Source of the DNA: Octopus sinensis
Lineage: Eukaryota
NCBI RefSeq assembly: GCF_006345805.1
Contig: NC_042998.1
Location: forward strand, 83,452,001 to 83,516,000
Length of the DNA stretch: 64,000 nt
Direction of reading: 5' to 3'
The position numbers and the translations under genes are program-made. Shown here piece after piece: positions 3,141 through 59,990 of the stretch. How positions within the stretch are numbered: the stretch's first letter is position 1; every line of letters begins with the position of its first letter. Below the pieces are notes generated by a model, which saw nothing but the letters and a program-made list of their open reading frames with translations, had not been told where the DNA came from and did not search any database.

Positions 3141-5460
<2,320 letters not shown>

Positions 5461-23577: not shown

Positions 23578-23741
23578 ATGCCGGTTAATATCAACAGAAA
23601 AGACTTTTCTTCGAGAAAGGGATTAATCGAAAAAGAAGCAAACCTTTTACTTCACCAATTATTTACGATTTATGATGAGAAATATTTTTATTGCAAACTT
23701 ACAGGAAATGTAAGAATTAGCTGGAGCAAACGAATGACCTC
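23578..23741 (+). CDS. SPRTN: SPRTN-like exon 1 (54 codons + 2 nt; ...FTIYDEKYFYCKLTGNVRISWSKRMTS)
   Basis: ATG with A at -3; ends TC|gtaagt (phase 2); WSKRMT matches SprT WSxRMT. An upstream exon via the AG at 23527-23528 cannot be excluded. Confidence 0.9.
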
Positions 23742-29700: not shown

Positions 29701-32700
29701 TATGATTTGTATGAAACTCAGTACCACTATGTAAACATTACTTTCTAAACTGTAACAATCTCCAGATTCAATCGCGCTTTCTTCTCAGTTTGACGTCGTG
29801 CATTTTCTCTCCGAATTCTCAACGGAAGCTTACTGTATACAATGTTCTTTAAATCATTTTACTGCTACAACCTGCTTTATGAATAAAATTTCATAAAACT
29901 TAAAATGGTTTCTATACTAGTAAATTATATACACATAGTAAATGATGTACATAGTAAAAATAGCTTTAAACTCATGAAGTCGACTACGCGACATCTGTAA
30001 TCACCTAAAGCTTTACTACAAAGTGTAAGTATATGGAGTTCTGTGTGAAGGCGCGTGGTCTAGTGGTTAGTGTTGCACTCACAATTGCTAGATCGTGAGT
30101 TCGATTCCAGGACGAGGGTGGCGCGCTGTGTTCTTGAGCAAAAACACTTCATTTCACGTTGCGCTTCAGTTCATTCGGTTGTAAATGGGTATCCATGCGA
30201 TGGAATCTTCTGATAAGGGGAATGTTGGCTTGCTCGCCTAACCTGCAAGGCGGCATCGTCCGAAGGCTAAAACTATGCAAAGCGCATTGGGACCAACAAC
30301 CGATCAGTACCGTGATATCAAATTCTAATAATTGGCTATTACTATATTTAAGTAAAATTCTTAAAATATAATCTAATATCTTTTATTTCTACAAAATTAA
30401 TCGAATTGTCTCGTAAATAGTCTTTAATTAAAGACACCAAAACAATCCTTGAAATTTCTCTATCGATTTTAGAAACTTGTCCATAAGACGTGAGTTTGAG
30501 TTGCACGGGAATCCATCGACCCTTTTCTCTTTAAATGCGTTTTTCTACCCAATATTTACATGATATCCATAGCTTTTTGTGCTTAAAAATTTACTTCTCC
30601 AAAAACAATTTTACAAGAAAACTACTGAATAGTCTGCCATTGAATCATTGACTAAAGTCTGTTACATTTTAATCTATCGCCTAAATATTCTTTCTTCTAA
30701 AACAGATTTTCCATGAATTCCATTCTGAATGTCACCATCTGCAGACTCATGTTTGGAAATGTAACGGTCCATGTCGAAAATCTAACTACGAGCATAGAGT
30801 TATTCGACGAGCTCAAAACAGGCCTCCTTCCAATAAGGAGAAATGGTTTCGTATCCATGCTAATATCTGTGGCGGTACTTTTGTTAAAGTAAAAGAACCT
30901 TCAGAAAAAAAATTTGGTAATTTTGTGTTCATTTAAAAAAAATATTTATGTTGGCATGTAGGGTCAGCTGGCCAATTCGTTAGCATGACGGGCAAAACGA
31001 TTAGCAGCATTTTTGTTCTTTACAATGAGTTCAAATTCCGCCGAGGTCGACTTCGCCTTTCATCCTTTAGAATTCAATAAAATAAGTATCAGTCGAGCAC
31101 TGGAGCCGATGTAATGGAATTACCCTCTTTCCCGAGATCATTGCCCTTGTGCTAATATATGAAACCAATATTTATGCAGACAGAATCGTTAGCACGCCGG
31201 ACAAAATGCTTAGCGGCCCTTCAGATTCTGTTCTGAGTTCAAATTCTGCTGAGATCGACTTTGTCTTTCGGGGTTGATAACAGAAGAGCCAGTCAAATAC
31301 TGCGGCCAATATAACTGACTGCCCCACTCCCTATAAAATTGCTGGCCTTGTGCCAAAATGTGATCATTACTTTGCGTTGAAATCCCATTTGTTGTAAAGC
31401 AAATACTTTTAATTTCATTGGTTTTGTTTCACTTGTTTAATCAGTGGGTGTGTATTCCTGACACTTGTACTCTCAATAGTCATCAAGCAGAATCTTGATA
31501 CAGGGCTCCTTTTAACTGTATATTCTATCGCGTCAGTAAAAGTTAAATATTTCGATTTGCACGTTATCTTCACAATTACATTATATTTGCGCGTTATTAG
31601 GGCATCAAAGGAAATGAGTGGGGGACACAGAAGTAAATAGTTTACGGCACAAAAGAAATCACTTTAAACTTCCTTAAATAACATTCCAAGTAATTTACAT
31701 GGTCGGAAAAAATATTTTTGTAGTGTTTCTGCTGTTATAGTGAGGATTTGATCAGATTTTGCAATTAAAGTAGAAAAATGTGTAAGTATACAAAAGTAAA
31801 CATTTTTCATCTTAGTTTGTTCAATTTTGAAAAATAAAAATTCATTTTATGGTTTGTTTACATTTTGAATTACATATAATTGGACACCAAGATCTTAAGA
31901 GATAAAGGATTCTTAATCTTAATCTGACCCTGTTTTAGCAATTATATTTTATACAATTGAATAATGGCGTCCTGATTATTGATTCCAGAGATCCAGTTCG
32001 TTGTTCACTGCATTTCGAGGCGTGACAAGGGAATGTCTATAACTCCATGCAAAACGGATCTCGAAGGACATTCATAAAATGCCGTTATTTCGGATCTGCA
32101 GCCAATATTTATCTGCACAAGAATACATATGCTTACGCCTGTAGAATCCCAGTCAGAAAATATATTACCCTAACCAAAGTAATGCCGCACCTTTCCCAAG
32201 GTATCGCACGGTGGGTGGTCGAACTCGGAACCATGTAGTTGCGGAGCGAACATTAACTACTCAGCCAATTCTTTCTTAGTTTGGATTTCACAAAGTTATA
32301 TCGCTTATGCAACACATAGACATTAAACAAACTGTCTCAAATTAGTTTCTGACTAAAACTATCTTGAATATTAATTACAAACGAGTAATGAATTTGATGC
32401 TGACGTTTTGGGCGAGGAGATGTTTTACGGTGTCTTGTTCGGTGCTTTAGTTAAATTATTTCTGCTTGGCTAGCCTTTGTCAGGCCTACACCTGAAAATG
32501 CTGAAATTAAGCCTAGCAGGTATTCACTCATCGCTTAAAATCTCATTAAAATAGTACAGCACTTGCACAAACTGCAAAAAAATGCAGACGGTATAAGTTA
32601 CCATTTTCTCCGTATTGTTTGGTTTGCAGTCACGATGAAACTGAAGAAAATAATGCAGCTTCATGCTGAGTGGTTGGGTAAAATATTGTTTTTATAAATT

Positions 32701-35700
32701 CGGTTCATTATATTGCTCTAACAATCACTACTTTGAAATTCATTTCCACATTTCTGAACGAAACAAGGCTTTACGATAAATCTCATTTGATAGGCGAATA
32801 GTAAGGTTTTTCTTGTTTATAGTCGATTAATTTTTTTTTTCACCTAAAATATTTTTCATTGCGTAAATCATTTCCTGTGTTTTCGTTTTTTCAAGAAAAG
32901 CATGTGATCAAAGCATTGCTTGTGTAGCAATTTTGATTACAAGCGCAATGGTATAGCCCTTGTCTGACCCCGTCTCCTCGCCCTTTATACAGGCTTATAC
33001 AATACACAAAAGATGCAATCATAAAAGCGACTCTCCACCCCAGCTACGTTATTAGGTAATGTAGATATTTTTTTCTACTCTAGGCACAAGGCACAAAATA
33101 TTGGGGGAGGGGCCAGTCCATTAGATCGGCCCAAGTTGGCAACTGGTACTTAATTTATCAACCCGAAAGGATGAAAGGTAAAGTCGACCTCGGCGGAATT
33201 TGAACTCAGAACGTAGACAGACGAAATACTGCTAAACATTTCGCTCGGCGTGCTAACGTTTCTGCCAGCTCGTTGCCTTAGATAATGTCTCCAGCAACAG
33301 ATACAAGCGAACAAGTCACAGCGAGGTCATTCGATGGGCTAGAAATAGAAACCATATATTCCGCAAATCAATTTGTCTTTAATCCCCTTTTCCGCGGGCC
33401 TTTATTAAAGACAAAAGATTGCTGTTTTATCTGTTAATTTCAAACTTTAAAAGAAAAGTTGAAAAAAAAAATTGTATTCGAAATTTCCATTCTACATTTC
33501 TACTAATTTCGTTGGTTATTTTCCCCTCAGCTGTATCTAATCAAGAATCCGTCCAGGCAACTTTTGTTGGGTTCAGTCGGTAACTGAATCTTAAATGGTT
33601 TGAACAACGCTTCTCGATGTTCCCCAACGAAGTAATCCTCTGGGTACAGGAGTTGTACCAAAGTATCAAGTCTGGAAACCGAACTGTTAAGTGTACACAG
33701 ACCTGCATCTGTTCGAACATGGCTAAATCAATGCCTATTACTCCCTTTTGGTAACAGAATATGGAAACCTCTTAAATCTCATCTCTAGAGAGATAGTTGT
33801 CTAGAATGACTCGAGTATTTGTTCCAAATCTTTTCTGAGATCAAATCCTGTAAAGATCGATTTTGCTTGTCATTCTCTAGGTATCGTTAAAAAATAGTAT
33901 CAGTCTAGGATGCTGTATTGGTGGAACTGTTTCAGAGTTGGACATGGTGCCTTGTGTCTGTTCTGGTCCTCTGAGTTCTGAATGCGACGACACCAGTTCC
34001 AGGATGTATAGACCCAAATTAGTGACCTTTCGCGTGGATAAACATCAGCGGCGTGGAGAGACAACTTGGATGCGTGAATCAAATCAAGTCCTTCCGCAGA
34101 AAGAAAATCAGGCAAATTTATGAACTTCAACGTGGCGGGCGGCAGGCGTGGGGTGGGCACACATACATCATACGAATTGGTTTTTAACGGTAGAACTGTA
34201 AGTAGATAACACTATAACTGCGCGTAAGTATTGGTTTGAAAAAATCCTTACATTGACGCGCTGCTTATAGTTAGATCTACTTCGTGTTCTACCGTTAAAA
34301 ATCATTTCGTGTCTGGAAGTTTGTAATTTCTAATGACATAAAGTCTATTTCTCTCTCTCTCTCTCTCTCTCTCGTTATTATGCAAAATTATCGTAAGTCC
34401 AAAACGTTTTTTTTCACCATTCCATGGCAAAACCGTTATACTACACTGACAATTTATGATATATTGGCAGCTGAAGATACAATAGTTTGACCAAAAGAAC
34501 CGGCTATTGCAAGCAAAAATATTGAAAAAGATTTTTTAAAACGCCGAATTTGGATATACGACAGTTTAACATAATAGCAACGATATATATATAGTTACCA
34601 TGTTTCAAGAAATATGGCATTTAAATATGGAATATTGGAAATTTTTTTTTCTCTAGAATTTAATCCAAGAATTGAAGAGGAACTAAGAACATATATTTCC
34701 AAAACGTGGAAAATTACCATAGAAGGTATTTATAGATTTTTCTAAAATTGTTGAAAACTTGGCATTTTTAAAAATATCAAATTCGTCAATGCTTTCGGGG
34801 TTTTATCAAAATTGTTCTTGCTATAAGTATTGGTCTTTATCAGTCACATTTGAGAATTGAGCCTTTTCCAAGATTCTAAATTAGTTTATTCTACAAACTG
34901 TTAAACATTCTTAGTCTAGGTTTAATGAACCTATATGTGGTCGTTTGAGTTGCTAGAAATATCGGTCAGGTTTCTCGAATCATACTTCATCGTCGTTAAA
35001 AATAAATAAAATTGTTTGGTAATCAGATTAACTGTTCCGGTTCGAATGGCTTTCAGATCTGTTCAGTCAGGGCAGATCCGGGGCTAAGTAACCGTACATA
35101 AAATCCGAGGTAGATATTGCACTGTATGTTGTCCTTCCACCTACATGGAAGATCCCTTGCGCTATGACTTCTGGAATGTCTGTACATGAGCTTGATATTT
35201 CAGATTTACAAAGTGGATACATCAATTCTTTAAGCCGAAGTTGACTTCCTTCTTCGAAAAGCGGTGGATAATATCAACATTTCCCATTTGTATTGCAAAA
35301 TATTTTAGTTATTGACGTTTGCGATAAGATGGTCAAACGACTGTTTCATTGTCCAAAACTGTTAAAGAAATTAACAAGAAACTAATGGATAAGTCCCATA
35401 CCATAAAATGAGTTAGTATTAAATTAACCAAGTTCTTCATGAAGTTCCTTGAAATTTGCTTTTAGCTTTTGTCACTGCACTGCGCCATGCTGAGGCACTG
35501 TCTTGAGTTTAGAACAAATAGACCCCGCCCCAACCAGTGCTAATTTTTAAAGCTTGATACGGGGACGTAAATAAATCAAAACTGGTTGTCAAGCGGCGGC
35601 AAGACATACATATACACATAACGGGCTTCATCCAGTTTCCGTCCACTAAATTCAATCACAAAGCTTTAGTTATCCCGGCACTATAGAAGACACTTACCCG

Positions 35701-36475
35701 AGGTGCAACGCAGTTGGACTGAACCTGGAACCATGTGGGTGGGAGATTCTTTGATCTCTACTTCAGAGTACGAAACTTGCTTTGAAGAGATTTAATAAGA
35801 CCGAAACATAGTTGTCTCCCGTATTTACCAGATGAAATATAGCCATTGGCTAATAGTTTTTTCCTTCTCACTACATAGCTATTTCTAATTAGTTTTCGTA
35901 CTGCTTACATTAAAGAAAGGTACATTTTTTAAGTACATTCTGCACATTTCTTGCAAAATCTCTTAAACCTTACTTTATTGCCTGGTGTTTTGCGTTCATT
36001 TGAGTTCATTTGTAGTCTCTTACTTATACAGTAGTTGACAGCTGTATTTACGATTTCGGAGTGAAATCTATTAACCCTTCTAGGGCCGGTGGGGTTGGAA
36101 TTACACAAAAAGCCATTGGGGTCCCCTTTTATTTTTGCGCATTTTCGCACTATCCATAAAGTAATTTTTTAAAATCTTGTACATGATACAAAACAAGAAA
36201 TTTAGCACTTTTATTAACTATACATTTGGCACTAAATATAGAATAAAAGAAAAAGTATATCGATTCCTACCAGTACAAATACGAAGAAAATTAACATAGT
36301 TTATCAGAATATCTGAAAAAGAACAAAAATTTCGCAAAAGACCAATGGGGTCCAGTTAAATCCTAATGACCGTATTTTATAACATCCATATGACTGGAAA
36401 TTTATAACTACAAATTTGTATGTGCATACAGTAGGACCTCGGTTTTCGAACAACTCAGATCACGAATAAATCACG

Positions 36476-36543
<68 letters not shown>

Positions 36544-39500: not shown

Positions 39501-40013
39501 GAACCATTTTTGATTCCCAATTGTTGGCATTTAATTCTTGCTAAAGTTGTTTAGAAATCTTCACAGGAGCTCTTGTCTATTTCATAAATCTAGTCTCGTT
39601 GATCTGAATCACCAATTACAAACTCTAATTGAATTCGGATATAAGTTTGTGTGCATTATATTAAAACTTTGAAATATAAACTCCAGCTCTAAATGTACAA
39701 ATATAAATTACTTGCAACGACGACTTTTCAAATCGATTTTTGAAACTGCTGTCAATATAATTTCGAAACTCTTGTACCACACCCTATTAGTTTTTTATTT
39801 TTTAATGTTTTTTTTTTTTCGAACAATGGTTAGATTTTAATCGTTACTTTTAAACATTCTCTTAAAGCTATGAAAAAACCCGCGTCATCTTCAGAAAGTG
39901 ATTTCTCAAGCGACAGTGATGACATGATTCTCAATTGTTATTCATGGAGTAGCTATTCCGATTCTTTTAGCGATTCAGGTGAGCAAGAACGAAATGTCTC
40001 TTTCTATCTCCAT

Positions 40014-40044
<31 letters not shown>

Positions 40045-49000: not shown

Positions 49001-52000
49001 GTTCTTCTCTTTAAAGTTCTTTCTCTTAAAGTTCTTTCTCTTTAAAGTTCTTTCTCTTTAAAGTTCTTTCTCTTTAAAGTTCTTTCTCTTTAAAGTTCTT
49101 TCTCTTTAAAGTTCTTTCTCTTTAAAGTTCTTTCTCTTTAAAGTTCTTTCTCTTTAAAGTTTTTCTCTTTAAAGTTCTTTCTCTTTAAAGTTCTTTCTCT
49201 TTAAAGTTCTTTCTCTTTAAAGTTCTTTCTCTTTAAAGTTCTTTCTCTTTAAAGTTCTTTCTCTTTAAAGTTCTTTCTCTTTAAAGTTCTTTCTCTTTAA
49301 AGTTCTTTCTCTTTAAAGTTCTTTCTCTTTAAAGTTCTTTCTCTTTAAAGTTCTTTCTCTTTAAAGTTCTTTCTCTTTAAAGTTCTTTCTCTTTAAAGTT
49401 CTTTCTCTTTAAAGTTCTTTCTCTTTAAAGTTCTTTCTCTTAAAGTTCTTTCTCTTTAAAGTTCTTTCTCTTTAAAGTTCTTTCTCTTTAAAGTTCTTTC
49501 TCTTTAAGTTCTTTCTCTTTAAAGTTCTTCTCTTTAAAGTTCTTTCTCTTTAAAGTTCTTTCTCTTTAAAGTTCTTTCTCTTTAAAGTTCGTTCTTTCTC
49601 TTTAAAGTTCTTTCTCTTTAAAGTTCTTTCTCTTTAAAGTTTTCTCTTTAAAGTTCTTTCTCTTAAAGTTCTTTCTCTTTAAAGTTCTTTCTCTTTAAAG
49701 TTCTTTCTCTTTAAAGTTCTTTCTCTTTAAAGTTCTTTCTCTTTAAAGTTCTTTCTCTTTAAAGTTCTTTCTCTTTAAAGTTCTTTCTCTTTAAAGTTCT
49801 TTCTCTTTAAAGTTCTTTCTCTTTAAAGTTCTTTCTCTTTAAAGTTCTTTCTCTTTAAAGTTCTTTCTCTTTAAAGTTCTTTCTCTTTAAAGTTCTTTCT
49901 CTTTAAAGTTCTTTCTCTTTAAAGTTCTTCTCTTTAAAGTTCTTTCTCTTTAAAGTTCTTTCTCTTTAAAGTTCTTTCTCTTTAAAGTTCTTTCTCTTTA
50001 AAGTTCTTTCTCTTTAAAGTTCTTTCTCTTTAAAGTTCTTTCTCTTTAAAGTTCTTTCTCTTTAAAGTTCTTTCTCTTTAAAGTTCTTTCTCTTAAAGTT
50101 CTTTCTCTTTAAAGTTCTTTCTCTTTAAAGTTCTTTCTCTTTAAAGTTCTTTCTCTTTAAAGTTCTTTCTCTTTAAAGTTCTTTCTCTTTAAAGTTCTTT
50201 CTCTTTAAAGTTCTTTCTCTTTAAAGTTCTTTCTCTTTAAAGTTCTTTCTCTTTAAAGTTCTTTCTCTTTAAAGTTCTTTCTCTTTAAAATTCTTTCTCT
50301 TTAAAATTCTTCCACTTTCTCTCTTCAAAAGTTATGTATTTTCTTTTTCAGTTACTGGAGTCCGTACCGTTGAAGCTGAAACTTCTTTACCATTGGACAA
50401 GAAAAGTAAATATTTGATTTAAACGAGCAGATACGAAATATCGATTTAGTTCTCTTTATTCATAATCTATTTTCAAAAATATTTTTTATTTTCTTTTAGC
50501 CACTAAATCCACAACTCGGGATAAACCAGCTACATTACTAACGAAAAATACATGTAAGACCATTTTCTTGAAGCTAATTATCAAGGATAAGATTCAATCT
50601 GCTTTGTCGTCTTTGTTTTGTAAGTTTTTTCCAGCTAAATTCATAACTCGTGCTAAATTGCTTACACTCAGCGAAATGCAGGCAAAGATAGTTTTATTTG
50701 AAATTCTAATGCAAAATTTGTCTTGATGAACTGGAAATCTCGATACTGTGGTTTGTTTCCATTCCTCATGCCTTTACTATTAAGGTTACGTCCACTTGAT
50801 CGTCGACTTGTTAGAAATGTAGCCAAATTTCCCTCAAGTTGTACCCTGCCGTCTTAGAAAAGGGCGCGTTGAAAAGACAGACTGGTAATATTTTGGTCAT
50901 AGATCTATTGTCCGAGCTAACCTTGAGCTAAAAGAACATGTAAAGAGTAATTTCCAATGAGATCACTTTTATACGGAAGCTGAATGCATTAGATTCAATC
51001 TTTCTGTTCATAACTTGTGCCAAACATTTTAAGGAAAATTTGAAATGTTATTGTAACCTTTTCTCCAAAAGATTTTGAATGCTGATGAGATTTTGAAGGG
51101 TTTTTTTTACATGTACGGCACATAGGATTGTGCGAAAATGGAATTTTTGTTACTAATGTAGTCTCAAGTTTTTACTGTAACCTCGAACCGGCCAAATCAC
51201 TTGTGTGAAATTTGGTAGACGGAAACTGTATGGAAGCCTATTTATGTATAGAAATGTATGTTTACATTCAGACTTCTAGCATGAAGCGTTGAGAAAAAAA
51301 AAACGGTGGCGTTTGTTGATAGTCCTTAACGAATCACTTCGTAACTTTGTGCGTTGGAAAAGGGGTGGAATGGAGTAACAATATCTCTAACCCGAGCAAT
51401 GGTTAGCGACAAGAAAAATATCGATATAAAACAATGTTTTGATACGTATTCGTCCGGTCCATGCTATGCTAGCATAGAAAAACGAACGTGAAATGAAGAC
51501 TTCGGGCGATATTTAATTTCTATTTAGCGGCTGAAACTCCTGTTACTGCAGCTCAAATTCCTTTGCCATCAACGAACAAGGAAAGTAAATAAGGTTGATT
51601 TAAATAAAGCTAATATTCGTGAGTTTCATGAGAAAAAAGGGAGATGACGTATCGATTTAAGTAGTTTAATTTCTTTTTATTCACAATTCAATTTTAAATA
51701 CTTTTTTAGCGTCGAAAGCTACCGCGACCCGAACGAAATCAGTATCACCACCACCAACTAAAAGTAAAAGTAAAAATCAATTTTTAATTCAATAAAACTA
51801 AGAGCATTGTAAAGAGTTATAGGTCGTGCGGTTCGCTTTCTATTTCCTCTTCACATTACCATCAGTGAACAAAAAAGTGAAAATCAATTTTCAACGAAAT
51901 CAATTGGAAGATGAACGTAGTTGAAATTAACTCTTTTCATAGCTTTCTTTTCATAACTTAGTCACTTATAGTTTATACGTATAAAGATATATAAAAACGT

Positions 52001-55000
52001 CATGATATACTAGTTAATCTTGCTTTCTAAAGATCTTGGCTGCTGAAACACAGCTGAGAGTGGATCTCATGGAGCAGTTAGTTCCCAGATCGTATCGTAC
52101 TAACACTTTATCCGGACTAGAAATATTCTCAAATTCCACTAAACAGATGATCACTTGGGGAGGAAGTTTGCCATATATCAGCTGGTGCAGCAGTGCAGAA
52201 ACCAGGGCTTGCAGGCAGGTTGCGACGCAATAGTAGTGGGCTGTCGAGGGTTTTGTGGGGCATTCATTCTGCAAAGCCTTTGATGCAACAAAGAGGGCTA
52301 TAAATTTCATTATTGAAGCTGCAAAGATAGCCTCTTGGGGACATTGAATAAAGGGCAGACCAGTGATTTGCTGCAACAGGAATGCAAACTGGGACTTCAT
52401 CAAACTTGATCAACCCGGGGTGAGTCAACTAGGCGAAGTAAATATTATGTTGAAAGACCCTACCTCCACTTCCCTTTGAAACACAAGAAACATCACTGAT
52501 GATGCATTCCAAAGCATCTGCGAGACATCTTAAAACTAACATACAAAAATATTCGAAAATATTTGCGTCGTTTAAATGAATGTCTTCAATCAAATAACAT
52601 TCTTTTTATTTATTTAGCAAAGAAATTGCCTGAAACTTCTAAAAATTCAGCGGCGAAGGAAAAAGGTAAATGAAGTACCAACAACTATAAATAATGAATA
52701 CTGTTTGAGTAAATTAGTTTACAACCTTTCGCTTCTTCAGAATTTACTTACTTGAGTTCCATTAAACAAAAGAACGTGAGGACTTCACAAGTCTGTCGTT
52801 CTATTAATAAAGGATTTATCCGTAAGAGTGTTAAAAGCGACAAATAAACTGAAAATCGTTACTGTGAAGTTCAATAACGGTGAACATGTTTTTGAATTCA
52901 GTGAAATTATTTCTCTAAATTTATTCAACCTGTATAGTACAGATATTCTGAAGTTACATGAGGTTTGTATCAAGAACTAATGGACGATAACTGGTATTTT
53001 AAGACTAGAGCAACTACTTTTAAAAATAGCAAGAGAAAATGCCAGATTTTAGAGATAGGGTATTGCAGTATGTAGTCGTTGACAACTGCGAATTTCTCCA
53101 GTCTTTTTCACGAGCTAGCGAGAAATACAAGCAGAGGCAATTTTTCCAATCTTTTTCACATGCCAGATCAAAAATGCTTTCCCCCTACTCTCAAAAATGC
53201 TGTTGAGTAAATACCTCCTTTAAAAAAAAAAAGGCTACTTAATTCTAAACCTAGTTTCCAATTCTAGTCGTCTCCACTTTTGACAAAGTTTAAACGTATT
53301 TCAATGATTTTATAGATGGCCCATTTTACAAATTAAGATATGCAGTTATTCCTGAACTGCTTCTACGAAGATAAACGTCACGATAGCTTAATCTTGTTTC
53401 CCAAAAAATCTTAAATACATTTAAAGTATAACGGAATAACATTTTTAAACAATTTGTTTTAAGCTAAGAAAACTGAAGCTCCAGCTAAGGTTTCATCAGT
53501 GAAGAAAAAACGTGAGTAATTTTACAAAATCAAATGTTATGACCTTTCGATTTTAATGAGTATGCAGCTAGTTTTCAATTCCAATCAACAAAAACACAAA
53601 ACCTCACAACAGACTTTTTTCCCTTAATTCCTTTCTTTAATGAATTTAATAAAGGTTAAAAGCAACAATCAAAGTTTACTTTCCTAACATTCTGGTCAAA
53701 TATTGATTTCAAATTCTGGCACAAAGCCAGCAATTTCGGGGCAAGTCGATTACGTTGACCCAATATTTACCTGGTACTCAGAGATCCCAAAAGAATGAAA
53801 GGCAAAGTCGATCCCGGCGGAATTTGAACTCAGAACTCGACGAAATGCTAAGTATTTTCATTGGTGTGTTAACGATTCTGCTCGCTGCCTAATTGTCAAA
53901 TTATTGAAAATAATAAATAGTACAGATGTTGCAGTGGCACTAATTAAAACGAAATTTCTATTTGAAGAATTTTTTTCATTAACGTGAAATGTTTGAAGAT
54001 ACGTTGTCGAGATTGTATGCGCTGTAAAATATTCTTGAATGTCTTCTGATGTCTTAGCGTTGTACATTGTGAAAATCACTCAAAGAAGTAAAATGGCAAA
54101 TTCTTGAATTTTACTTATAAAAACATTTTCTATCTCCAAAGTTTGAAATACAACAGAAATCCAGCATTTTGGGGTCTGAACTTGAAAATGAGATCCAAGC
54201 CGTTTCAAGTCTTTCTAAATGAAGTTCTCTCATTGTTATGCAGGATTACAATTAAAGAAATGTTATTGTAACAGTAACTAAAATGAATATTTTTCCAGCA
54301 AAAATATTTTTCACACTTTTTACACACTTCAGCAATTATTTTTGTTCATTTTCATTGTATGTCAAACCTACATTAAATCTTTGTTCTGAGAGTATGTGCT
54401 AAGGTGCCAAAGAAAAGTTCTGACTGCGCCTGAGGTGTGATGGCTAACACGGTTCCGAATACACATACAGACGCAACATCTGACGAAGTGTTTCCCACCG
54501 CATCTACGGTTGTAGTGGTTAGCTATGCGATTACGATGTCACACCGGCTGTGACAGCCTAATTGAAATTGCGATACTTCTATTCTCCAGTCATACATCAC
54601 TCATGATCTTGTATACAGGCTTTATATATATACAGTCATTTGGCTGCAGCCATGCTGGGGCACCGCTTTGAATTTTAGTCGAACAAATCGACCCGGGACT
54701 TTTGAAAGCTTCGTATTTTATCGATCTTTTTGCCGAACCGCTAAGTTACGAGGGCTTAGACGCACCAATACCGGTTGTCAAGCGATGATGGACACACGGA
54801 CATACACAGATACGACGGGCTTTCAATTTCCGTCCACCAAATCCACTCACAAGGCTTTGGTCGACTAGAGGCTATAGTAGACATTTGCCCAAGATACCAC
54901 GCAGTGGGACTGAAAATGAAACCATATGGTTGAGAAGGAAGCTTATCACACAGCCATATGTAAATATACTGCATGAAGAGTAGAACTGATGCTCCCCACT

Positions 55001-58000
55001 CAGTCCCCACCTCCTCTTTTTTTTTGAAAATGCAATAGTTTGCGTGCTCCATAATTCTATGCCTTGATGTTGGACAACTTCAAACTTTTAAACCATCGAA
55101 TTAAGCATAGCAATTTCCTTTTTTTTTTTTTCCAACTCTCACAGCCCTATTTAGGAGTGCTTATCCCACTGTTATGAGAAATACTGTGAGTAAAAAAACC
55201 TCATTGAGCAGTATTTCCTTTGATTTTTTGCTAGGCGTGTTCTAATTTTCTCTTTACAAAGTATGTACGCTTCTTTGTGAGCAACCATCTTCAATTAAGA
55301 ATGTTCGATTGCATCTTAAGCTTCGTGTGTGCATATTTCCTTTGTTCTCTAATTAAGGTAGTGCATTGCTGTTGACTTTAACTCACATAGTCTTAAGCTT
55401 AGTTTCGAATTCCTATGTTGAGTCCCGCCCCCTCTCTTCAGTTCGCGAATCAATAACAGATACTTATCAAGTTCTCTCCTAACCTCAAATGATTCCCTTC
55501 GATTCAATTAAAACTAAATACCCCGTTTCAACTGTATTGATCATAGCGTATTGATTATATTGGTTTTATCTTCTAAAGACTATAGATAACTATAATATTA
55601 GAAATTTTAACTTTTAGCCGCTGATTCTTCTTCAAAGACTGCAAAAACTAAGAAAAAGGGTAAGTAAAGATCAATTTCTAACAAAATCAAATTTAACGTG
55701 TCTGAAACTTTTTTTTCATGGCGTTATTTGAGTCTTATTGGTCAGTTTGTTACTAAGCCCTCAGCAAATTCATTCGCAGACTCTCAGCCCCTTCTGTTTA
55801 TATTTCTCACTGGTTTTGATTTTATAAAGTCTCGAGCCAGCTGTCACTCATGAACAAGTATGGCTTAGAAAGAGGTTTCACGCTTTTACTAATTCTTTGA
55901 ACTGTCTACGCTATTGCGAGCAGACAAGGGCACCCATACGGTTCTTCTGTATTGACACTTAAATATCAATAACTAGAGCTTTTTTACCAAAATCTCTTCC
56001 TGCAAATGACTGTCCGATTTATTGAAATGTTGAGATAATACTTGTTCTTCCTGAATAAATCCTTATAGCTAAAGATCATGAAGTGCAATTCAAATCCTGT
56101 CTCCTAAAGATTATAACTGCTGACATAGTTACATTTGTCTCCAAACAAGAAATTTTTACGCTACTAAAAATACTGAAACTCCATCTAAAACAAACAAAAA
56201 GAAATGGGAGTCGAGATCAATTTGCAGCCAATTTTCCCCGTTAATTTAAAGCAACAAGATCGCAAGGTGGGTCATGTTCTATATTGTCTTGTCACGTTGC
56301 TTCTCACTTTATCAATATTGCAGAACGATTACTGTTCTGAAGCTACCAATAGAAGGGGTGAAGAAGACCGACCATCTGAGGCGACACTTTTATGCAGGGT
56401 AACACTCGTATATCTACAGTGTAAACCTGTACAGGGTTCGGGGCCTAGCTGTGGCGGCAATCTCAAGGTCTACCCATGCAGTACTTTTACTACGCTACTA
56501 GTTGCAAAGGACATAGTGATAAGTTTCCCAAAAAGAGAAACTGCTTTTCCATTCAATCGAAATTTTATTTCTAGATGCTATTTAGGTGATTATTTCTAGA
56601 TACTCAATGCTAGATATTTTTGATTTTTACCTAGAAATAATTTCCTTTCCAGAATTACCAACAAATGAGAAAACGAAAATGGCTCCTAAATTCCCTGAGA
56701 GTAATATTACTTTTTTATATTTAATTTATATTTCGTAGAGTAAGCATAGCAAACTCAATATAATCAATTAGAAGCTGGTCTTTTGTTCAATAACAAGTTT
56801 TTCTACAACATAAGGTGGGCAGACAAATCGGCAATTGTTTGTGATGGTTTTAGATGCTCTGCACTAATCATTACGATTCGTTGTGTTGAAATCCCTCAGA
56901 AGTCAACTTTGCCTATCGTTCCTTCAAGGTTGATAAAATACCCGTCAAGTACTGAGATCGATATAGAGTAGATAACCCACTTGTCCCACAAATTTCAGAT
57001 CTCGTGCCAAAGAAATCATGGCAGAACTCAGTATCTGTAAAAATTTATTGCAATATGTTTTACGCTCAAACTCTCACCGAAGTAGTTTATCATTTTGAAG
57101 CCGATAGTACTAATCTAAAACAGGCTGCGAACAGGTCTGACACTGCCATTTTGGACCACTCGTTTAGCGTCGCTGATTTGACGCTGCCTTGCTTGCTATG
57201 TATTGTCACCGGGACATCATGGCACCGTAAAAACTTACTACTCTAGTTAACAACTAACTTATAATCACTTCTAAACTTTTAGCTTCCTGCTCCACATGTG
57301 AGATTGCTGGTGAAATAGTGATGAAATGTGGAAAACAATTTTCTTACAATGGGTTTCTGCAGGTTTTTGACAAAGTAGAACCGAGTTAATTTAAATTTTA
57401 ACGCTGTGAGCAGAAAAATTAAAGAGAAACAAGATTTATTAGATAACACCTATTACCACAAACACTTCTCCATCTTGCCTCTTTGTATTTCTGTACGTGC
57501 GTGTGTGTATTTGCTTCTGTCACTAAAAGAAGCCATTACCAAAATGGATTCGGTGTCCACTCCGCCGTACAAAATAGCCAGCGTCTAAACAGCCGCACTA
57601 CATCGTTTCATTCGGGAGGTTTGCTTTAAGGGGAAATCTAACGTAAATTCGAACAAAACTTTAATCTTTGCTTCTAATTTGTAATTTTTTCACATGCTAC
57701 GCCGCGGCACATCAGCAAATAGATTCCAGTCTTTTTGCAAATAAGCCATAGACCAGCGATTAACTTTGTTTGGAGATTATCCGGGTACTTGGTATTAATA
57801 CGTTACAATTGACAAAATATCGATATCTATCATTTTCAGGGATTCCGAGGTGAGTTGTCTCGGCTGGTCAGTGACATTCAGGTGTTCTTTAACACTCGGC
57901 GTCAGTTGAGGAGCTTTCCTTGAACGCTATACCGCAGCAAATTTGACTAAAATATATACACTATGTAAGTGCGACCAATAATGTTCACATTACTTGAACG

Positions 58001-58195
58001 GTTTTTAATTCGGGACTTAAATTTAATATTTCAGAAACCAAGAAATACAAATGGCAATGTTATGGCCCATGTCAAAACGAGGCTCCAATGTTTGGTCGTG
58101 TAGAACGTTTAATTAACAGACCACCAAATACAAGAGAAAAATGGTTTTTGCTTCACGAAAAAAATTGTGGAGGAAGTTTCGTTAGGCTCGATTAA
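23578..58195 (+). CDS. SPRTN: Spliced gene: divergent SPRTN/Spartan-like SprT metalloprotease with a microexon-encoded linker and a second C-terminal SPRTN-type zinc-binding domain (about 550 aa minimum from the confident exons)
   Basis: Manual joining of GT-AG exons gives one open frame. N-terminus: MPVNINRKDFSSRKGLIEKEANLLLHQLFTIYDEKYFYCKLTGNVRISWSKRMTS/CAGCTLQPDVDRICNISLSRPLLELRPLEDLLETLL/HEMIHAYLWVTKEN/EHQEHGPKFHAEKKRIEKRSGMKLE/IFHEFHSECHHLQTHVWKCNGPC...HANICGGTFVKVKEP. This is colinear with the SPRTN SprT domain (WSxRMTxCAG, LSxPLLxLRP, LLHEMIHAYL, HGPxF, WxCxGPC, HxxxCGG). Probably a paralog rather than the canonical ortholog. Confidence 0.88.
26311..26419 (+). CDS. SPRTN: SPRTN-like exon 2 (CAGCTLQPDVDRICNISLSRPLLELRPLEDLLETLL)
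   Basis: ttttaataag|A...CTG|gtaaat; 109 nt, phase 2 to 0; matches SPRTN CAG...LSEPLLKLRPRKDLVETLL. Confidence 0.94.
27337..27378 (+). CDS. SPRTN: SPRTN-like exon 3, HEXXH active site (HEMIHAYLWVTKEN)
   Basis: tttttcag|CAC GAA ATG ATC CAT GCT TAT...AAT|gtaagt; 42 nt, phase 0 to 0. Confidence 0.95.
29303..29377 (+). CDS. SPRTN: SPRTN-like exon 4, third Zn ligand (EHQEHGPKFHAEKKRIEKRSGMKLE)
   Basis: tttctttgcag|GAG...GAA|gtgatt; 75 nt, phase 0 to 0; matches SPRTN GHGPEF..HM.RIN..G..I. Confidence 0.92.
30706..30916 (+). CDS. SPRTN: SPRTN-like exon 5, zinc-binding domain ZBD1 (IFHEFH...WKCNGPC...NRPPSNKEKWFRIHANICGGTFVKVKEPSEKKF)
   Basis: ttcttctaaaacag|ATT...TTT G|gtaatt; 211 nt, phase 0 to 1; CxGPC and HxxxCGG Zn ligands intact. 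Confidence 0.95.
33080..33280 (-). mobile_element. SINE family B copy (others at about 2025-2198, 2843-2995, 13385-13595, 19180-19400, 25415-25570, 28530-28665, 30960-31355, 53715-53890, 56880-57010)
   Basis: Shared core gagttcaaattccgccgaggtcgactttgcctttcatcctttcggggtcgataaa and tail ggccttgtgcc; boundaries approximate. Confidence 0.75.
34172..34310. repeat. Short foldback (about 55-bp arms, about 30-bp loop), intronic
   Basis: acgaattggtttttaacggtagaac...cgcgtaa versus the reverse complement of tgacgcg...gttctaccgttaaaaatcatttcgt. Confidence 0.7.
36075..36700. mobile_element. piggyBac-like MITE (TTAA TSD, CCCTT terminus)
   Basis: TTAA|cccttctagggccggtgggg ... ccccgccggcccacgaagga|TTAA. 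Confidence 0.7.
36429..36584. mobile_element. Tigger/pogo-like MITE nested in the piggyBac MITE, with (TA)n at its centre
   Basis: TA|cagtaggacctcggttttcgaaca ... tgttcgaaaatcgaggtattactg|TA. Confidence 0.65.
37841..38216. repeat. 15-bp minisatellite, about 25 copies (CTATTAAATGTTAGC/T)
   Basis: Read directly; explains ORF 37831-38088 (NVSLL)n. Confidence 0.97.
39039..39113 (+). CDS. Candidate linker exon (DLFFTSIEHSGQSLKFCKVEQDFSG)
   Basis: catttccag|AT...GGA T|gtaagt; 75 nt, symmetric phase 1, open frame; no homology support. Confidence 0.45.
39868..39978 (+). CDS. Linker exon, acidic Ser/Asp-rich (AMKKPASSSESDFSSDSDDMILNCYSWSSYSDSFSDS)
   Basis: ttctcttaaag|CT...TCA G|gtgagc; 111 nt, symmetric phase 1. 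Confidence 0.8.
40045..40375 (-). mobile_element. SINE family A copy, intronic (others at about 18545-18770, 20755-21015, 28800-29120, 35480-35745, 51180-51480, 54630-54960)
   Basis: Shared core and tail motifs; boundaries approximate. Confidence 0.7.
41296..41319 (+). CDS. Linker microexon, 24 nt (DFSTDEES)
   Basis: ttttttttatttcag|AT...TCA G|gtgagc; symmetric phase 1. Confidence 0.8.
42223..42270 (+). CDS. Candidate linker exon, 48 nt (DNFASNEKTEMKAPKT)
   Basis: ttctaaactag|AT...ACC A|gttact; symmetric phase 1; peptide and length resemble exon 56653-56700 (NEKTKMAPK); weak donor. Confidence 0.45.
42786..42818 (+). CDS. Linker microexon, 33 nt (AKSVKPRMENK)
   Basis: ttactttcag|CT...AAA T|gtgagt; symmetric phase 1. 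Confidence 0.78.
42932..42985 (+). pseudogene. Dead type-B linker exon (open frame, donor lost)
   Basis: Paralog of 44085-44141; acceptor cctag intact, donor position reads ATTACT. Confidence 0.6.
43209..43253 (+). CDS. Type-A linker exon, 45 nt (AKSTAQVTPVKENR)
   Basis: ttctttttag|CT...CGA T|gtaagt; symmetric phase 1. Confidence 0.78.
43301..43357 (+). pseudogene. Dead type-B linker exon (two in-frame TAA, GC donor)
   Basis: CT AAA ACC GTT TAA...AGA TAA GAT AAA C|gcgagt. Confidence 0.62.
43557..43610 (+). CDS. Type-A linker exon, 54 nt (LKTTAQVKVVTPPKENR)
   Basis: ttctttttag|CT...CGA T|gtaagt; symmetric phase 1. Confidence 0.78.
43679..43735 (+). pseudogene. Dead type-B linker exon (open frame, donor GA)
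   Basis: tttcaag|TT AAA ACC GTT TTA...GAT AAA C|gagagt. Confidence 0.6.
43950..44003 (+). CDS. Type-A linker exon, 54 nt (TKSSTPLKPVTLPNENR)
   Basis: cctttttag|CT...CGA T|gtaagt; symmetric phase 1. Confidence 0.78.
44085..44141 (+). CDS. Type-B linker exon, 57 nt (KTASTQDVLLTPPPTENK)
   Basis: ttttttttccag|CT...AAA C|gtgagt; symmetric phase 1. Confidence 0.8.
45139..45182 (+). CDS. Type-C linker exon candidate, 44 nt as assembled (AKFTVTISPLEKKK)
   Basis: tttctttag|TT...|gtgagt with good sites, but it ends in an A9 run and is 1 nt off symmetric; 3' end resembles 50352-50405. Confidence 0.4.
45279..45323 (+). CDS. A/B hybrid linker exon, 45 nt (TKMRVLFKSSTESK)
   Basis: tcttctag|AT...AAA C|gtgagt; symmetric phase 1. 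Confidence 0.7.
46543..46596 (+). other. Type-A exon with lost donor (TTAAGA): dead, or read through into the next exon
   Basis: Acceptor intact; frame stays open across the following 81-nt ex-intron to 46734. Confidence 0.55.
46678..46734 (+). CDS. Type-B linker exon, 57 nt (KTASTRDALVIPPPTENK)
   Basis: ttttttctag|TT...AAA C|gttagt; symmetric phase 1. Confidence 0.72.
47333..50331. repeat. 3-kb intronic satellite: about 26 x 22-bp unit, then about 147 x 16-bp unit (TTCTTTCTCTTTAAAG)
   Basis: Read directly; copy numbers estimated from length divided by unit. Confidence 0.97.
50352..50405 (+). CDS. Type-C linker exon, 54 nt (TGVRTVEAETSLPLDKK)
   Basis: ttctttttcag|TT...AAA A|gtaaat; symmetric phase 1. 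Confidence 0.72.
50500..50553 (+). CDS. Type-A linker exon, 54 nt (TKSTTRDKPATLLTKNT)
   Basis: ttcttttag|CC...ACA T|gtaaga; symmetric phase 1. Confidence 0.75.
50635..50690 (+). pseudogene. Degenerate type-B exon (no phase-1 donor found; 3' end approximate)
   Basis: ttttttccag|CTAAATTC..., exactly 81 nt after the type-A donor, as in the other units. Confidence 0.45.
51528..51584 (+). CDS. Linker exon, 57 nt (AETPVTAAQIPLPSTNKE)
   Basis: tttctatttag|CG...GAA A|gtaaat; symmetric phase 1. Confidence 0.75.
51710..51763 (+). CDS. Linker exon, 54 or 60 nt (SKATATRTKSVSPPPTK)
   Basis: cttttttag|CG...AAA A|gtaaaa; second in-frame donor 6 nt downstream (end 51769). Confidence 0.7.
52030..52545 (+). 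mobile_element. Degenerate 3' end of a Hero/R2-superfamily REL non-LTR element, intronic
   Basis: QLRVDL..QL, STKQMI, RK...Y.LVQQCR.QG...C.AIVVGCRGF, followed by a Hero-like 3' UTR (tgttgaaagaccc..gaaacac..catcactgatgatg). Confidence 0.65.
52618..52665 (+). CDS. Linker exon, 48 nt (KKLPETSKNSAAKEK)
   Basis: tttatttatttag|CA...AAA G|gtaaat; symmetric phase 1. Confidence 0.77.
53464..53511 (+). CDS. Linker exon, 48 nt (KKTEAPAKVSSVKKK)
   Basis: tttgttttaag|CT...AAA C|gtgagt; symmetric phase 1. Confidence 0.78.
55618..55659 (+). CDS. Linker exon, 42 nt (ADSSSKTAKTKKK)
   Basis: aacttttag|CC...AAG G|gtaagt; symmetric phase 1. Confidence 0.8.
56161..56205 (+). pseudogene. Dead linker exon (TKNTETPSKTNKKK); both splice sites mutated
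   Basis: tttttacg|CT...AAA T|gggagt; open K/T/P-rich frame like its neighbours. Confidence 0.55.
56653..56700 (+). CDS. Linker exon, 48 nt (LPTNEKTKMAPKFPE)
   Basis: tttcctttccag|AA...GAG A|gtaata; symmetric phase 1. Confidence 0.68.
57840..57849 (+). other. 10-nt microexon candidate (GGATTCCGAG)
   Basis: ctatcattttcag|GGATTCCGAG|gtgagt; strong sites, but length is not a multiple of 3. Confidence 0.45.
58035..58195 (+). CDS. SPRTN: Terminal coding exon: second SPRTN-type ZBD (TKKYKWQCYGPCQNEAPMFGRVERLINRPPNTREKWFLLHEKNCGGSFVRLD*)
   Basis: aatatttcag|AA..., phase 1; CxGPC and HxxxCGG intact; TAA at 58193-58195; donor g|gtaagt 4 nt after the stop. Confidence 0.9.
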
Positions 58196-59461: not shown

Positions 59462-59990
59462 GTTTCACATTTCGCCCATTTTCATTATTCTGAATCGAAG
59501 CCTCAAATTTCAGCATCCGTTAAAGACTCGCGAGATAGGTTTTAAACTACTTTTCTTCGGAATTGTTTCGAAATCCTTTTAGATTTGTGAAATCTAAAAG
59601 TTTCTAAAATGTCATTCTTGGCTTTTAAAGAACTTTTTGTTTTGTTTTTTTCGTTTTAACAATATTTCTTGTTTTGCATCTACTGTATGATTTGTTTGTT
59701 ATGACAGCGATATTTCTATATAAAGAGTTACGATTATCTATTTCATAAGATATCCAAAGCGTACCAAATTTCCCGTCAAGAATAAATTGTCTTCTGTCTT
59801 TAATTTTTTTGTTAGGAAATTTCATTAAAGCCTGAATGCTCGTTACAGTAACTAATACTACTGTTTTTATTTTTTTACAATTTCATCTGAACAGAACTAA
59901 TTTTTTTTTCTTTGTCTTCATTTGAATGAAGTCTTAATGTTTTTATATTTGTTTTAAACTTCTACAATAAAATGCGCTTTTATCTGAAAT
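59462..59990 (+). other. Putative 3' UTR exon of the SPRTN-like gene (3' end approximate)
   Basis: Long T-tract ...ttttcttccag| acceptor; AATAAA at 59781 and 59966. Confidence 0.5.

What the first reader, a model, noticed from the sequence alone, without database searches (positions are those of the whole stretch)
30706..58195. Two SPRTN zinc-binding domains in one protein: protease-ZBD1-long linker-ZBD2
Seen: exon 58035-58195 encodes a second WxCxGPC...NRPP..EKWF..HxxxCGG.FV unit, 20/47 identical to ZBD1 by manual alignment. Both share NRPP and EKWF where I recall human having NREP and DYWW, implying internal duplication. Known: the SPRTN ZBD binds ssDNA and gates substrate access, and canonical SPRTN ends in SHP, PIP and UBZ motifs, none of which I find here. 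Inference: a tethered second DNA sensor replaces ubiquitin/PCNA/p97 recruitment. I know of no such architecture.
Basis: partly seen in the sequence, partly recalled or inferred. Interest (0 to 1): 0.92.

Follow-up and report, generated by a model that had tools for sequence, protein, structure and literature searches.

The report
Octopus Spartan paralog with two ZBDs
The window holds a 20-exon octopus gene for a Spartan-type DNA-repair protease that carries a second, conserved copy of its small zinc DNA-binding domain at the end of a long floppy tail, an unusual but already-annotated variant of a known protein family that sits beside a normal Spartan gene elsewhere in the genome.

Summary
One + strand gene (23578-58195, 20 exons, all AG/GT) encodes SprT protease, ZBD1 (exon 5), a ~250-aa disordered linker and ZBD2 (last exon, 58035-58195, then TAA). 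Both ZBDs match Pfam SPRTN_ZBD end to end (E 4e-20 and 3e-21). The model reproduces annotated Octopus sinensis and O. vulgaris Spartan isoforms; 11 of 12 keep both ZBDs. An unidentified, more distant relative (Logan contig, one uninterrupted ORF) has the same layout, and there ZBD2 is the best-conserved part (dN 0.33; protease 0.41; linker 0.76).

The interpretation needs correcting. This is a lineage-specific paralog, not the octopus SPRTN: a canonical, human-like SPRTN with a UBZ exon lies on another chromosome. The paralog lacks the basic region, SHP, PIP and UBZ. ZBD1 and ZBD2 form an exclusive clade (UFBoot 99) and share EKWF, seen in 0 of 205 other ZBDs, so an old internal duplication is likely; NRPP is not diagnostic.

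Most likely ZBD2 plus the lysine-rich tract before it is a tethered second DNA-binding module. ZBD1 has lost the near-universal aromatic-Gly motif, which ZBD2 keeps. No DNA binding was tested.

It is a new variant of a known kind, present in databases; my searches found no paper describing it. Interest is moderate.

The parts
23578..23741 (+). Exon 1: ATG and the N-terminal part of the SprT domain (MPVNINRK...WSKRMT)
   Evidence: Exact match to annotated proteins; donor gtaagt
26311..26419 (+). Exon 2: SprT domain (CAGCTLQP...LLETLL)
   Evidence: AG/GT sites
27337..27378 (+). Exon 3: catalytic HEMIH motif (HEMIHAYLWVTKEN)
   Evidence: within the Pfam SprT-like match, 1.1e-24
29303..29377 (+). 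Exon 4: third zinc-ligand His (EHGPKF) and the end of the protease domain
   Evidence: aligned to human H130
30706..30916 (+). Exon 5: linker helix plus ZBD1 (HVWKCNGPC...NRPPSNKEKWF...HANICGGTFVKVKEP). It starts in phase 0 and ends in phase 1.
   Evidence: Pfam SPRTN_ZBD 4.4e-20; AlphaFold2 pLDDT above 90
34657..34725 (+). Exon 6: conserved acidic amphipathic helix EFNPRIEEELRTYISKTWKITIE, in the place of the human basic region
   Evidence: predicted helix 205-226 with pLDDT about 90; similar in Argonauta and P0001
39868..39978 (+). Exon 7: Ser/Asp-rich acidic tract (AMKKPASSSESDFSSDSDD...)
   Evidence: residues 201-268 have net charge -10
41296..41319 (+). Exon 8: DFSTDEES
42223..42270 (+). 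Cassette exon (DNFASNEKTEMKAPKT), used in the 521-aa O. vulgaris isoform P0232 and in the O. bimaculoides model
43209..56700 (+). Eleven short Lys/Thr/Pro-rich linker exons, every length divisible by 3 and every exon phase 1 to phase 1: 43209-43253, 43950-44003, 44085-44141, 45279-45323, 46678-46734, 50352-50405, 50500-50553, 52618-52665, 53464-53511, 55618-55659, 56653-56700. Three are cassettes (43950, 46678, 56653). A further unannotated candidate lies at 43557-43610. Several are tandem exon-plus-intron duplicates.
   Evidence: net charge +23; pLDDT below 50
58035..58195 (+). Exon 20: ZBD2 (KYKWQCYGPC...NRPPNTREKWF...HEKNCGGSFVRLD) and the TAA stop. Its phase-1 acceptor matches the phase-1 donors of exons 5-19.
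   Evidence: Pfam SPRTN_ZBD 3.2e-21; 47/52 identical to O. bimaculoides and 31/52 to P0001; pLDDT 72-86 with the same order of secondary-structure elements as ZBD1

Best explanation
The region is one gene for a cephalopod-lineage paralog of the DNA-protein-crosslink protease SPRTN. The window appears to be Octopus sinensis.

Layout: an intact SprT metalloprotease (HEMIH plus a third His); ZBD1; a conserved acidic helix where human SPRTN has its basic region; a Ser/Asp-rich acidic tract; a Lys/Thr/Pro-rich disordered tether whose length varies by alternative splicing; and a second ZBD as the extreme C-terminus. The canonical SPRTN, with a basic region and a UBZ, is a separate gene on another chromosome.

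Shown here:
- the gene structure and the two bona fide ZBDs;
- paralog status;
- loss of the basic region, SHP, PIP and UBZ;
- purifying selection on ZBD2;
- conservation of the four zinc ligands and of the Arg and Trp that matter in human ZBD.

Inferred mechanism: ZBD2, together with the most basic stretch of the tether just before it, acts as a second DNA-binding module. It would anchor the protease on DNA, probably single-stranded or junction DNA, without PCNA, ubiquitin or p97. It may also supply in cis the DNA-dependent opening that human SPRTN gets from the basic region next to its ZBD. ZBD1 has lost the near-universal aromatic-Gly motif and would mainly keep the lid/autoinhibitory role on the protease. 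The acidic segments may shield the basic modules until DNA displaces them.
For: Gene model:
- 20 exons with AG/GT sites translate to the 505-aa O. vulgaris isoform with one substitution, and that residue matches the O. sinensis protein.
- RefSeq O. sinensis isoforms X1-X3 lie on a contig of the same length as G000:C2.
- 11 of 12 annotated isoforms have both ZBDs. In the O. vulgaris annotation, alternative forms come from PASA assemblies of Iso-Seq and RNA-seq (PMC10700109).
- P0001 and P0222 (two sequencing runs) carry the same architecture in one uninterrupted ORF on 1.7-kb contigs.

Domains:
- Pfam SprT-like 1.1e-24; SPRTN_ZBD 4.4e-20 and 3.2e-21.
- Human SPRTN structures 6mdw/6mdx are the top sequence hits (E 4e-44) and fold hits (E 6e-16).
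- A ZBD2-only model has pLDDT 82, and its only meaningful fold hits are 6mdw/6mdx (probability 0.98).

Paralogy:
- A ZBD exon on C12 is 33/48 identical to human, against 20/48 for the window's ZBDs. It is flanked by SprT exons and followed by a UBZ4 exon.

Selection:
- Against P0001, dN is 0.33 for ZBD2, 0.41 for the protease, 0.44 for the ZBD1 exon and 0.76 for the linker, with synonymous sites saturated.
- Against O. bimaculoides, omega is 0.26.

Key residues:
- C169, C173, H201, C205, R185 and W197 equivalents are kept in both ZBDs.
- The Y180-G181 equivalents are kept only in ZBD2. Octopus and Argonauta ZBD1 are the only 2 of 218 ZBDs without that Gly.

Charge and motifs:
- The acidic segment has net charge -10; the basic tether has +23 and is most basic just before ZBD2.
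- No SHP, PIP or UBZ motif.

Background in human SPRTN:
- ZBD and basic region together sense DNA structure (PMC7534798).
- ZBD autoinhibits the protease, and the basic region plus DNA relieve this (preprints).
Against: - No DNA-binding or protease assay exists for this protein.
- Neither ZBD keeps an aromatic residue at the human Y179 position, so ssDNA binding may differ from human.
- No PAE or coordinates were available to see whether ZBD2 docks on the protease.
- ZBD2 was not found in the Argonauta hians locus or in 10 kb downstream of it, so it is dispensable in at least one octopod, or was missed.
- One annotated isoform (P0231) splices inside the ZBD2 exon and destroys it.
- I saw no reads myself; transcript support in Octopus is through annotations.
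- The organism of P0001 is unknown, and its contigs could be genomic rather than cDNA.
Confidence: 0.6

Rival explanations
1. ZBD2 is an intramolecular regulator rather than a recruiter. It would compete with ZBD1 for the protease surface or for the acidic helix, or mediate dimerisation, setting the activity threshold. The alternatively spliced tether would tune its effective local concentration.
For: In human SPRTN the ZBD holds the protease autoinhibited, and an acidic linker helix binds the basic DNA-binding domains. The paralog has a conserved acidic helix and an acidic tract directly after ZBD1. Tether length varies through four cassette exons.
Against: ZBD2 keeps the Arg and Trp needed for DNA-dependent activity in human and is preceded by a strongly basic tract, as expected for nucleic-acid binding. 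No docking evidence was obtainable.
Confidence: 0.2
2. The ZBD2 exon belongs to a separate downstream gene or is a decaying relic, and the join to the protease exons is a gene-prediction artefact.
For: UniProt A0A0L8IF26 (O. bimaculoides, 183 aa) models the linker plus ZBD2 alone. The newer O. bimaculoides model P0003 lacks ZBD1. The Argonauta model lacks ZBD2.
Against: The O. bimaculoides models are explained by a 583-N assembly gap that starts 25 nt into the ZBD1 exon. All exons from 5 to 20 share phase 1. Eleven of 12 isoforms in two species, built with long-read evidence, join them. P0001 encodes both in one ORF. ZBD2 is the slowest-evolving part of the protein. No second protease copy lies between 31 and 58 kb.
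Confidence: 0.04
3. ZBD1 and ZBD2 are alternative, mutually exclusive exons, so that each protein has only one ZBD.
For: They are similar exons within one gene, a common source of mutually exclusive splicing.
Against: Exon 4 ends in phase 0 while the ZBD2 exon needs a phase-1 donor, so a 4-to-20 join shifts the frame. No annotated isoform skips exon 5. The P0001 ORF holds both.
Confidence: 0.02

Closest known systems
Human SPRTN / Spartan (PDB 6MDW, 6MDX)
   Same: SprT metalloprotease with HExxH plus a third His, immediately followed by a C-x3-C...H-x3-C zinc-binding domain. About 43% identity over 170 residues. The R185 and W197 equivalents are conserved.
   Different: It is not the ortholog; that is the gene on G000:C12. 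It has no basic region after ZBD1, no SHP, PIP or UBZ, and it has a second ZBD at the C-terminus. The Y179 aromatic is lost in both ZBDs.
Drosophila Spartan-family paralogs (duplicates of mh, CG2694, Gcna; Brand et al. 2024, PMC11210505)
   Same: Lineage-restricted duplication and divergence of a Spartan-family protease alongside a conserved parent gene, with change concentrated in the C-terminal regulatory part.
   Different: That paper's text mentions no zinc or ZBD domain at all. Germline-restricted expression is shown there and is not tested here.
GCNA / ACRC
   Same: A SprT-family protease joined to a long acidic, Ser/Asp-rich disordered region.
   Different: From my own knowledge, GCNA's disordered region lies N-terminal to the protease. 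Here it is C-terminal, and both zinc domains match the SPRTN-type Pfam model.
P0114, an unnamed 382-aa protein on a Logan contig (SRR18067493)
   Same: SprT plus two SPRTN_ZBD domains separated by a linker (Pfam finds 2 stretches).
   Different: It is an independent duplication: its two ZBDs are each other's sisters (UFBoot 100). The gene is intronless on a compact 7.3-kb contig, its linker is short, and it has sequence after ZBD2.

Membership tests
SPRTN/Spartan family (SprT-like protease + SPRTN_ZBD) | SprT-like metalloprotease domain with HExxH and a third His ligand | tested here: met
   PF10263 E 1.1e-24; HEMIH in exon 3 and EHGPKF in exon 4, aligned to human H111/E112/H115/H130
SPRTN/Spartan family (SprT-like protease + SPRTN_ZBD) | Zinc-binding domain (C-x3-C...H-x3-C) directly after the protease | tested here: met
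   PF22934 E 4.4e-20 for ZBD1. ZBD2 also scores 3.2e-21 over 48/48 profile positions. The four ligands are invariant in all 218 ZBDs compared, including both of these.
SPRTN/Spartan family (SprT-like protease + SPRTN_ZBD) | Basic DNA-binding region right after the ZBD (human K220-K223) | tested here: not met
   An acidic helix, EFNPRIEEEL..., follows ZBD1. The canonical octopus copy has GKKKESKVSKTDKK there.
SPRTN/Spartan family (SprT-like protease + SPRTN_ZBD) | C-terminal SHP box, PIP box and UBZ4 zinc finger | tested here: not met
   Regular expressions find all three in human SPRTN and none in the octopus, Argonauta or P0001 proteins
SPRTN/Spartan family (SprT-like protease + SPRTN_ZBD) | One-to-one orthology with vertebrate SPRTN | tested here: not met
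   The C12 locus is the human-like copy (ZBD 33/48 identical to human, with a UBZ exon). The window's ZBDs are 20/48 and 19/48.
SPRTN/Spartan family (SprT-like protease + SPRTN_ZBD) | DNA-dependent proteolysis of DNA-protein crosslinks | not testable with these tools
   Needs biochemistry
Wss1 / WLM proteases | WLM domain | tested here: not met
   PF08325 E 0.045, 14.3 bits against a cut-off of 26
GCNA/ACRC | Acidic disordered region N-terminal to a C-terminal SprT domain | tested here: not met
   The protease is N-terminal (residues 25-128) and the disordered region is C-terminal. The definition of the family is from my own knowledge.

The most novel reading that the evidence does not exclude
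After an ancient internal duplication, the two jobs of the SPRTN ZBD were split between two copies. ZBD1, whose aromatic-Gly DNA pocket has decayed, survives as the lid that keeps the protease shut. ZBD2, fused to a basic tract and held on an alternatively spliced tether of variable length, is the actual DNA-structure sensor and opens the enzyme in cis. This would be a natural separation-of-function version of SPRTN, independent of PCNA, ubiquitin and p97, and possibly specialised for a particular tissue or chromatin context.
Probability: 0.25. Interest if true: 0.65.

Novelty: new variant of a known kind. Interest (0 to 1): 0.48.

Why it matters
How the ZBD and basic region convert DNA binding into opening of the SPRTN active site is an active question (PMC7534798 and two 2026 preprints).

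This paralog is a natural rearrangement of those parts. It has no basic region next to ZBD1, an acidic helix in that place, and a second ZBD with a basic tract at the far end of a tunable tether. Comparing ZBD1 with ZBD2, and the full-length protein with a version lacking ZBD2, would test whether the lid function and the DNA-sensor function of a ZBD can be separated.

It also adds cephalopods to Drosophila (PMC11210505) as a lineage in which the Spartan family has duplicated and rebuilt its regulatory tail.

The architecture is rare. Among 223 ZBD-bearing proteins examined, drawn from a search of 1.84 billion representatives, only this group and one unrelated protein have two ZBDs.

Tried and rejected
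- **Second protease copy between 31 and 58 kb (tandem gene):** none found with human, octopus, Argonauta or P0001 probes.
- **ZBD2 as a processed pseudogene.** The tblastn alignment to human ran upstream of the exon ('KYIHYVSATNNVHIT*TVFNS'). It contains a stop and lies beyond a good acceptor. I treat it at most as a faint trace of the old 5' part of a duplicated exon 5, unproven.
- **Mutually exclusive exons:** the phases are incompatible.
- **Raw identity as evidence of internal duplication:** fails. ZBD2 is 20/48 identical to ZBD1 and a median 21/48 to any ZBD. The case rests on the tree and on EKWF.
- **Identifying the organism of SRR8281686/7:** no paper names these runs. Its protein is more distant from Octopus (53%) and Argonauta (51%) than they are from each other (60%).
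- **Third homolog search, with the P0001 tail:** found only itself.
- **IQ-TREE on all 218 ZBDs:** timed out. FastTree put two unrelated sequences (a frog fragment and an unnamed protein) inside the ZBD1+ZBD2 group. The 58-sequence IQ-TREE run did not.
- **Synteny between the Argonauta flanks and the window:** only repeat hits.
- **Foldseek on ZBD2 alone:** the right top hit but weak (E 9e-3, TM 0.43).
- **SHP and PIP in the canonical C12 gene:** not found by my regular expressions in the 5.6 kb searched; only the UBZ was found.
- **O. sinensis versus O. bimaculoides dN/dS:** only 9 differences in ZBD2, and a hand binomial estimate of p about 0.07. Suggestive only.
Full report
**1. What is in the sequence**

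The exon at 58035-58195 follows a ttcag acceptor. It reads (E)TKKYKWQCYGPCQNEAPMFGRVERLINRPPNTREKWFLLHEKNCGGSFVRLD and ends in TAA. It matches Pfam SPRTN_ZBD (PF22934) over the whole 48-position profile at E 3.2e-21.

The exon at 30706-30916 gives ZBD1 at E 4.4e-20. The exons upstream of it give a SprT-like protease at E 1.1e-24. Human SPRTN has NREP and DYWW where both octopus domains have NRPP and EKWF.

**2. Gene model**

A probe search located protease exons at 23578-23741, 26311-26419, 27337-27378 (HEMIH) and 29303-29377 (EHGPKF), then ZBD1.
- Exon 5 ends in phase 1 and the ZBD2 exon begins in phase 1.
- Homology searches returned annotated proteins identical to these exons. [quoted passage not shown]
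- The O. sinensis proteins lie on a contig of 207,928,902 bp, the length of G000:C2 that holds the window. The window is therefore most likely O. sinensis.
- Mapping the 505-aa isoform onto the window gives 20 exons, all with AG/GT. The translation is identical except for one residue, and that residue matches the O. sinensis protein.
- Exons 6-19 all have lengths divisible by three and sit between phase-1 introns, so any of them can be skipped in frame. Four are cassettes in the annotated isoforms (42223-42270, 43950-44003, 46678-46734, 56653-56700).
- Eleven of the 12 isoforms contain both ZBDs and end in GGSFVRLD. One (P0231) uses a donor inside the ZBD2 exon and runs on to an exon near 59489.
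- In the O. vulgaris annotation, alternative forms were added by PASA from Iso-Seq and RNA-seq assemblies (PMC10700109). This is indirect transcript support; I did not see reads.

**3. Apparent counter-examples**

O. bimaculoides has a model without ZBD1 (P0003) and a 183-aa model with only linker and ZBD2 (P0065). In the O. bimaculoides locus a run of 583 N begins 25 nt into the ZBD1 exon. Both models are assembly artefacts.

The Argonauta hians model has ZBD1 and a long Lys-rich tail but no ZBD2. I found no ZBD2 in its locus or in 10 kb downstream.

**4. A deeper relative**

P0001 (399 aa) is a complete ORF on a 1725-bp Logan contig from SRR8281686. A near-identical ORF (1198 of 1200 nt) comes from SRR8281687.
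- It has SprT, ZBD1, the same 'EF(D/N)xR(L/I)(D/E)EE' helix, a disordered linker, and ZBD2 as its last residues.
- Its protease-ZBD1 part is 53% identical to Octopus and 51% to Argonauta, which are 60% identical to each other. It therefore branches outside the two octopods. I could not identify the species.
- Against it, dN is 0.33 for the ZBD2 exon, 0.41 for the protease, 0.44 for the ZBD1 exon and 0.76 for the alignable linker. Synonymous sites are saturated.
- ZBD2 is thus the most constrained part of the protein, which excludes a relic. The shallow comparison with O. bimaculoides gives omega 0.26 on only nine differences.

**5. Paralog, not ortholog**

A scan of the whole genome with PF22934 finds five places.
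- The best (89.8 bits, G000:C12) reads HWWRCNGPCQNWKPFYGWVKRATNRAPSKNDFWWERHRMTCGGQYIKVKEPEGYGKKKESK. It is 33/48 identical to human and is followed by a basic region. Human-like SprT exons lie upstream and a UBZ4 exon (CPVCEKRVPENIINQHLDEC) downstream. This is the canonical SPRTN.
- The window's gene lacks the basic region, SHP, PIP and UBZ. The same regular expressions find the three motifs in human SPRTN.

**6. Origin of ZBD2**

Raw identity does not help: ZBD2 is as similar to any ZBD (median 21/48) as to its own ZBD1 (20/48).

A maximum-likelihood tree of 58 ZBDs is more informative.

| Group | UFBoot |
|---|---|
| ZBD2 of Octopus and P0001 | 98 |
| ZBD1 of Octopus, Argonauta and P0001 | 96 |
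| ZBD1 and ZBD2 together, as an exclusive clade | 99 |

A FastTree of all 218 ZBDs agreed except for two stray sequences inside the joint group.

EKWF occurs in 0 of 205 other ZBDs, while NRPP occurs in 71. An internal duplication before the Octopus/P0001 split is therefore the best reading. The caveats are that the domain has only 48 columns and that both clades evolve fast.

**7. Rarity**

A search of 1.84 billion representative proteins with ZBD2 gave 605 hits. Only two of the best 150 had two matched stretches. A local HMM over all 223 proteins collected finds two ZBDs only in the octopus/P0001 group and in P0114.

P0114 is an intronless gene on a compact contig. Its two ZBDs are sisters (UFBoot 100), so it is an independent duplication.

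**8. Structure and residues**

AlphaFold2 on the 487-aa isoform gives:

| Segment | Residues | pLDDT |
|---|---|---|
| Protease and ZBD1 | to about 195 | above 90 |
| Helix | 205-226 | about 90 |
| Disordered linker | 237-429 | below 50 |
| ZBD2 | 439-487 | 72-86 |

ZBD2 has the same order of strands and helix as ZBD1. Foldseek finds 6mdw/6mdx for the whole model (E 6e-16). For a ZBD2-only model they are again the top and only meaningful hits, but weakly (E 9e-3, probability 0.98).

Across 218 ZBDs:
- The four zinc ligands are invariant, and the equivalents of R185 and W197 nearly so (217 and 216 of 218). All six are kept in both octopus domains.
- The aromatic at Y179 (204 of 218) is lost in both.
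- The Y180-G181 pair is kept in ZBD2 only. Octopus and Argonauta ZBD1 are the only two sequences of 218 without that Gly.
- In human SPRTN, Y179A/W197A and R185A reduce DNA-dependent activity (PMC7534798).

**9. Linker**

Residues 201-268 are acidic (net -10). Residues 269-452 are Lys/Thr/Pro-rich (net +23) and most basic just before ZBD2. Several linker exons, with their flanking introns, are 73-78% identical to one another, so the tether grew by tandem exon duplication.

**10. Mechanism (inferred)**

In human SPRTN the ZBD binds ssDNA and the basic region binds dsDNA (PMC7534798). The ZBD holds the protease closed, and the basic region plus DNA open it (preprint 10.64898/2026.04.29.721615). 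An acidic helix contacts the basic DNA-binding parts in the closed state (preprint 10.64898/2026.06.16.732584).

The paralog has no basic region next to ZBD1 but has a basic tract plus ZBD2 at its far end. The most economical reading is that this distal module provides DNA anchoring and perhaps the opening signal. ZBD1 would be mainly a lid, and the acidic segments would shield the basic parts until DNA displaces them. None of this has been assayed.

**11. Verdict**

The feature is real and well conserved. It is already present in sequence databases, and my literature searches found no description of it. It is a new variant of a known family rather than a new kind of system.

Noticed in passing
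G000:C8460:185900-187000 (loci L005, L013): A third SPRTN-like gene (protease, ZBD, UBZ) sits on an unplaced 670-kb scaffold. Its GT-AG introns are only about 24-27 nt long, and local GC is 33.6%, unlike the kilobase introns of the octopus genes. The scaffold may come from another organism in the sample; from my own knowledge, dicyemid kidney parasites of octopus have such tiny introns. Not verified.
   Followed up: partly
G000:C6:80479630-80479725 (locus L006): An isolated fragment resembling the second half of ZBD1 (IIRRAQNRLPSDNEKWFRTHANICDGTF) lies in an ORF next to low-complexity sequence. It looks like a relic copy of part of exon 5.
   Followed up: no
window 47333-50311: About 3 kb of satellite sits inside the intron between exons 13 and 14: a 22-bp unit x28 and a 16-bp unit x151, 96-98% matches. 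It accounts for the very low GC (0.25) and strong strand skew there.
   Followed up: partly
window 37843-38216: A 15-bp tandem repeat (CTATTAAATGTTAGC x25, 98% matches) lies in the intron between exons 6 and 7.
   Followed up: no
window 3280-4911 (+): A retrotransposon fragment: reverse transcriptase (RVT_1, E 5e-22) followed by a weak zf-RVT match, preceded by a Leu/Ile homopolymer-like run.
   Followed up: partly
window 21104-22293 (+): Open frames upstream of the gene's first exon, with a CCHC zinc knuckle (E 1e-4) and a weak RRM_3 match. This is probably a gag-like remnant of a mobile element.
   Followed up: partly
L015 7883-8465 (O. bimaculoides CM046602.1): An assembly gap of 583 N starts 25 nt into the ZBD1 exon. 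It explains why the RefSeq model XP_052821850.1 skips ZBD1 and why an older UniProt entry models only the linker plus ZBD2.
   Followed up: yes
window 58099-59500: One O. vulgaris isoform (CAI9718177.1, P0231) uses a GT inside the ZBD2 exon (after ...APMFG), resumes near 58186 in another frame and continues to an exon near 59489. The product lacks an intact ZBD2. It may be a minor or noise transcript.
   Followed up: partly
L017 1030-2178 (Logan SRR18067493 contig): P0114, an intronless SprT protein from an unidentified organism with a compact genome, also has two SPRTN_ZBD domains. They arose by an independent internal duplication.
   Followed up: partly
window 43557-43610: A well-formed phase-1 exon (AG...GTAAGT, 54 nt, LKTTAQVKVVTPPKENR) is paralogous to exons 9 and 10 and conserved in O. 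bimaculoides, but is used in none of the 12 annotated isoforms. It is a candidate extra cassette exon.
   Followed up: partly
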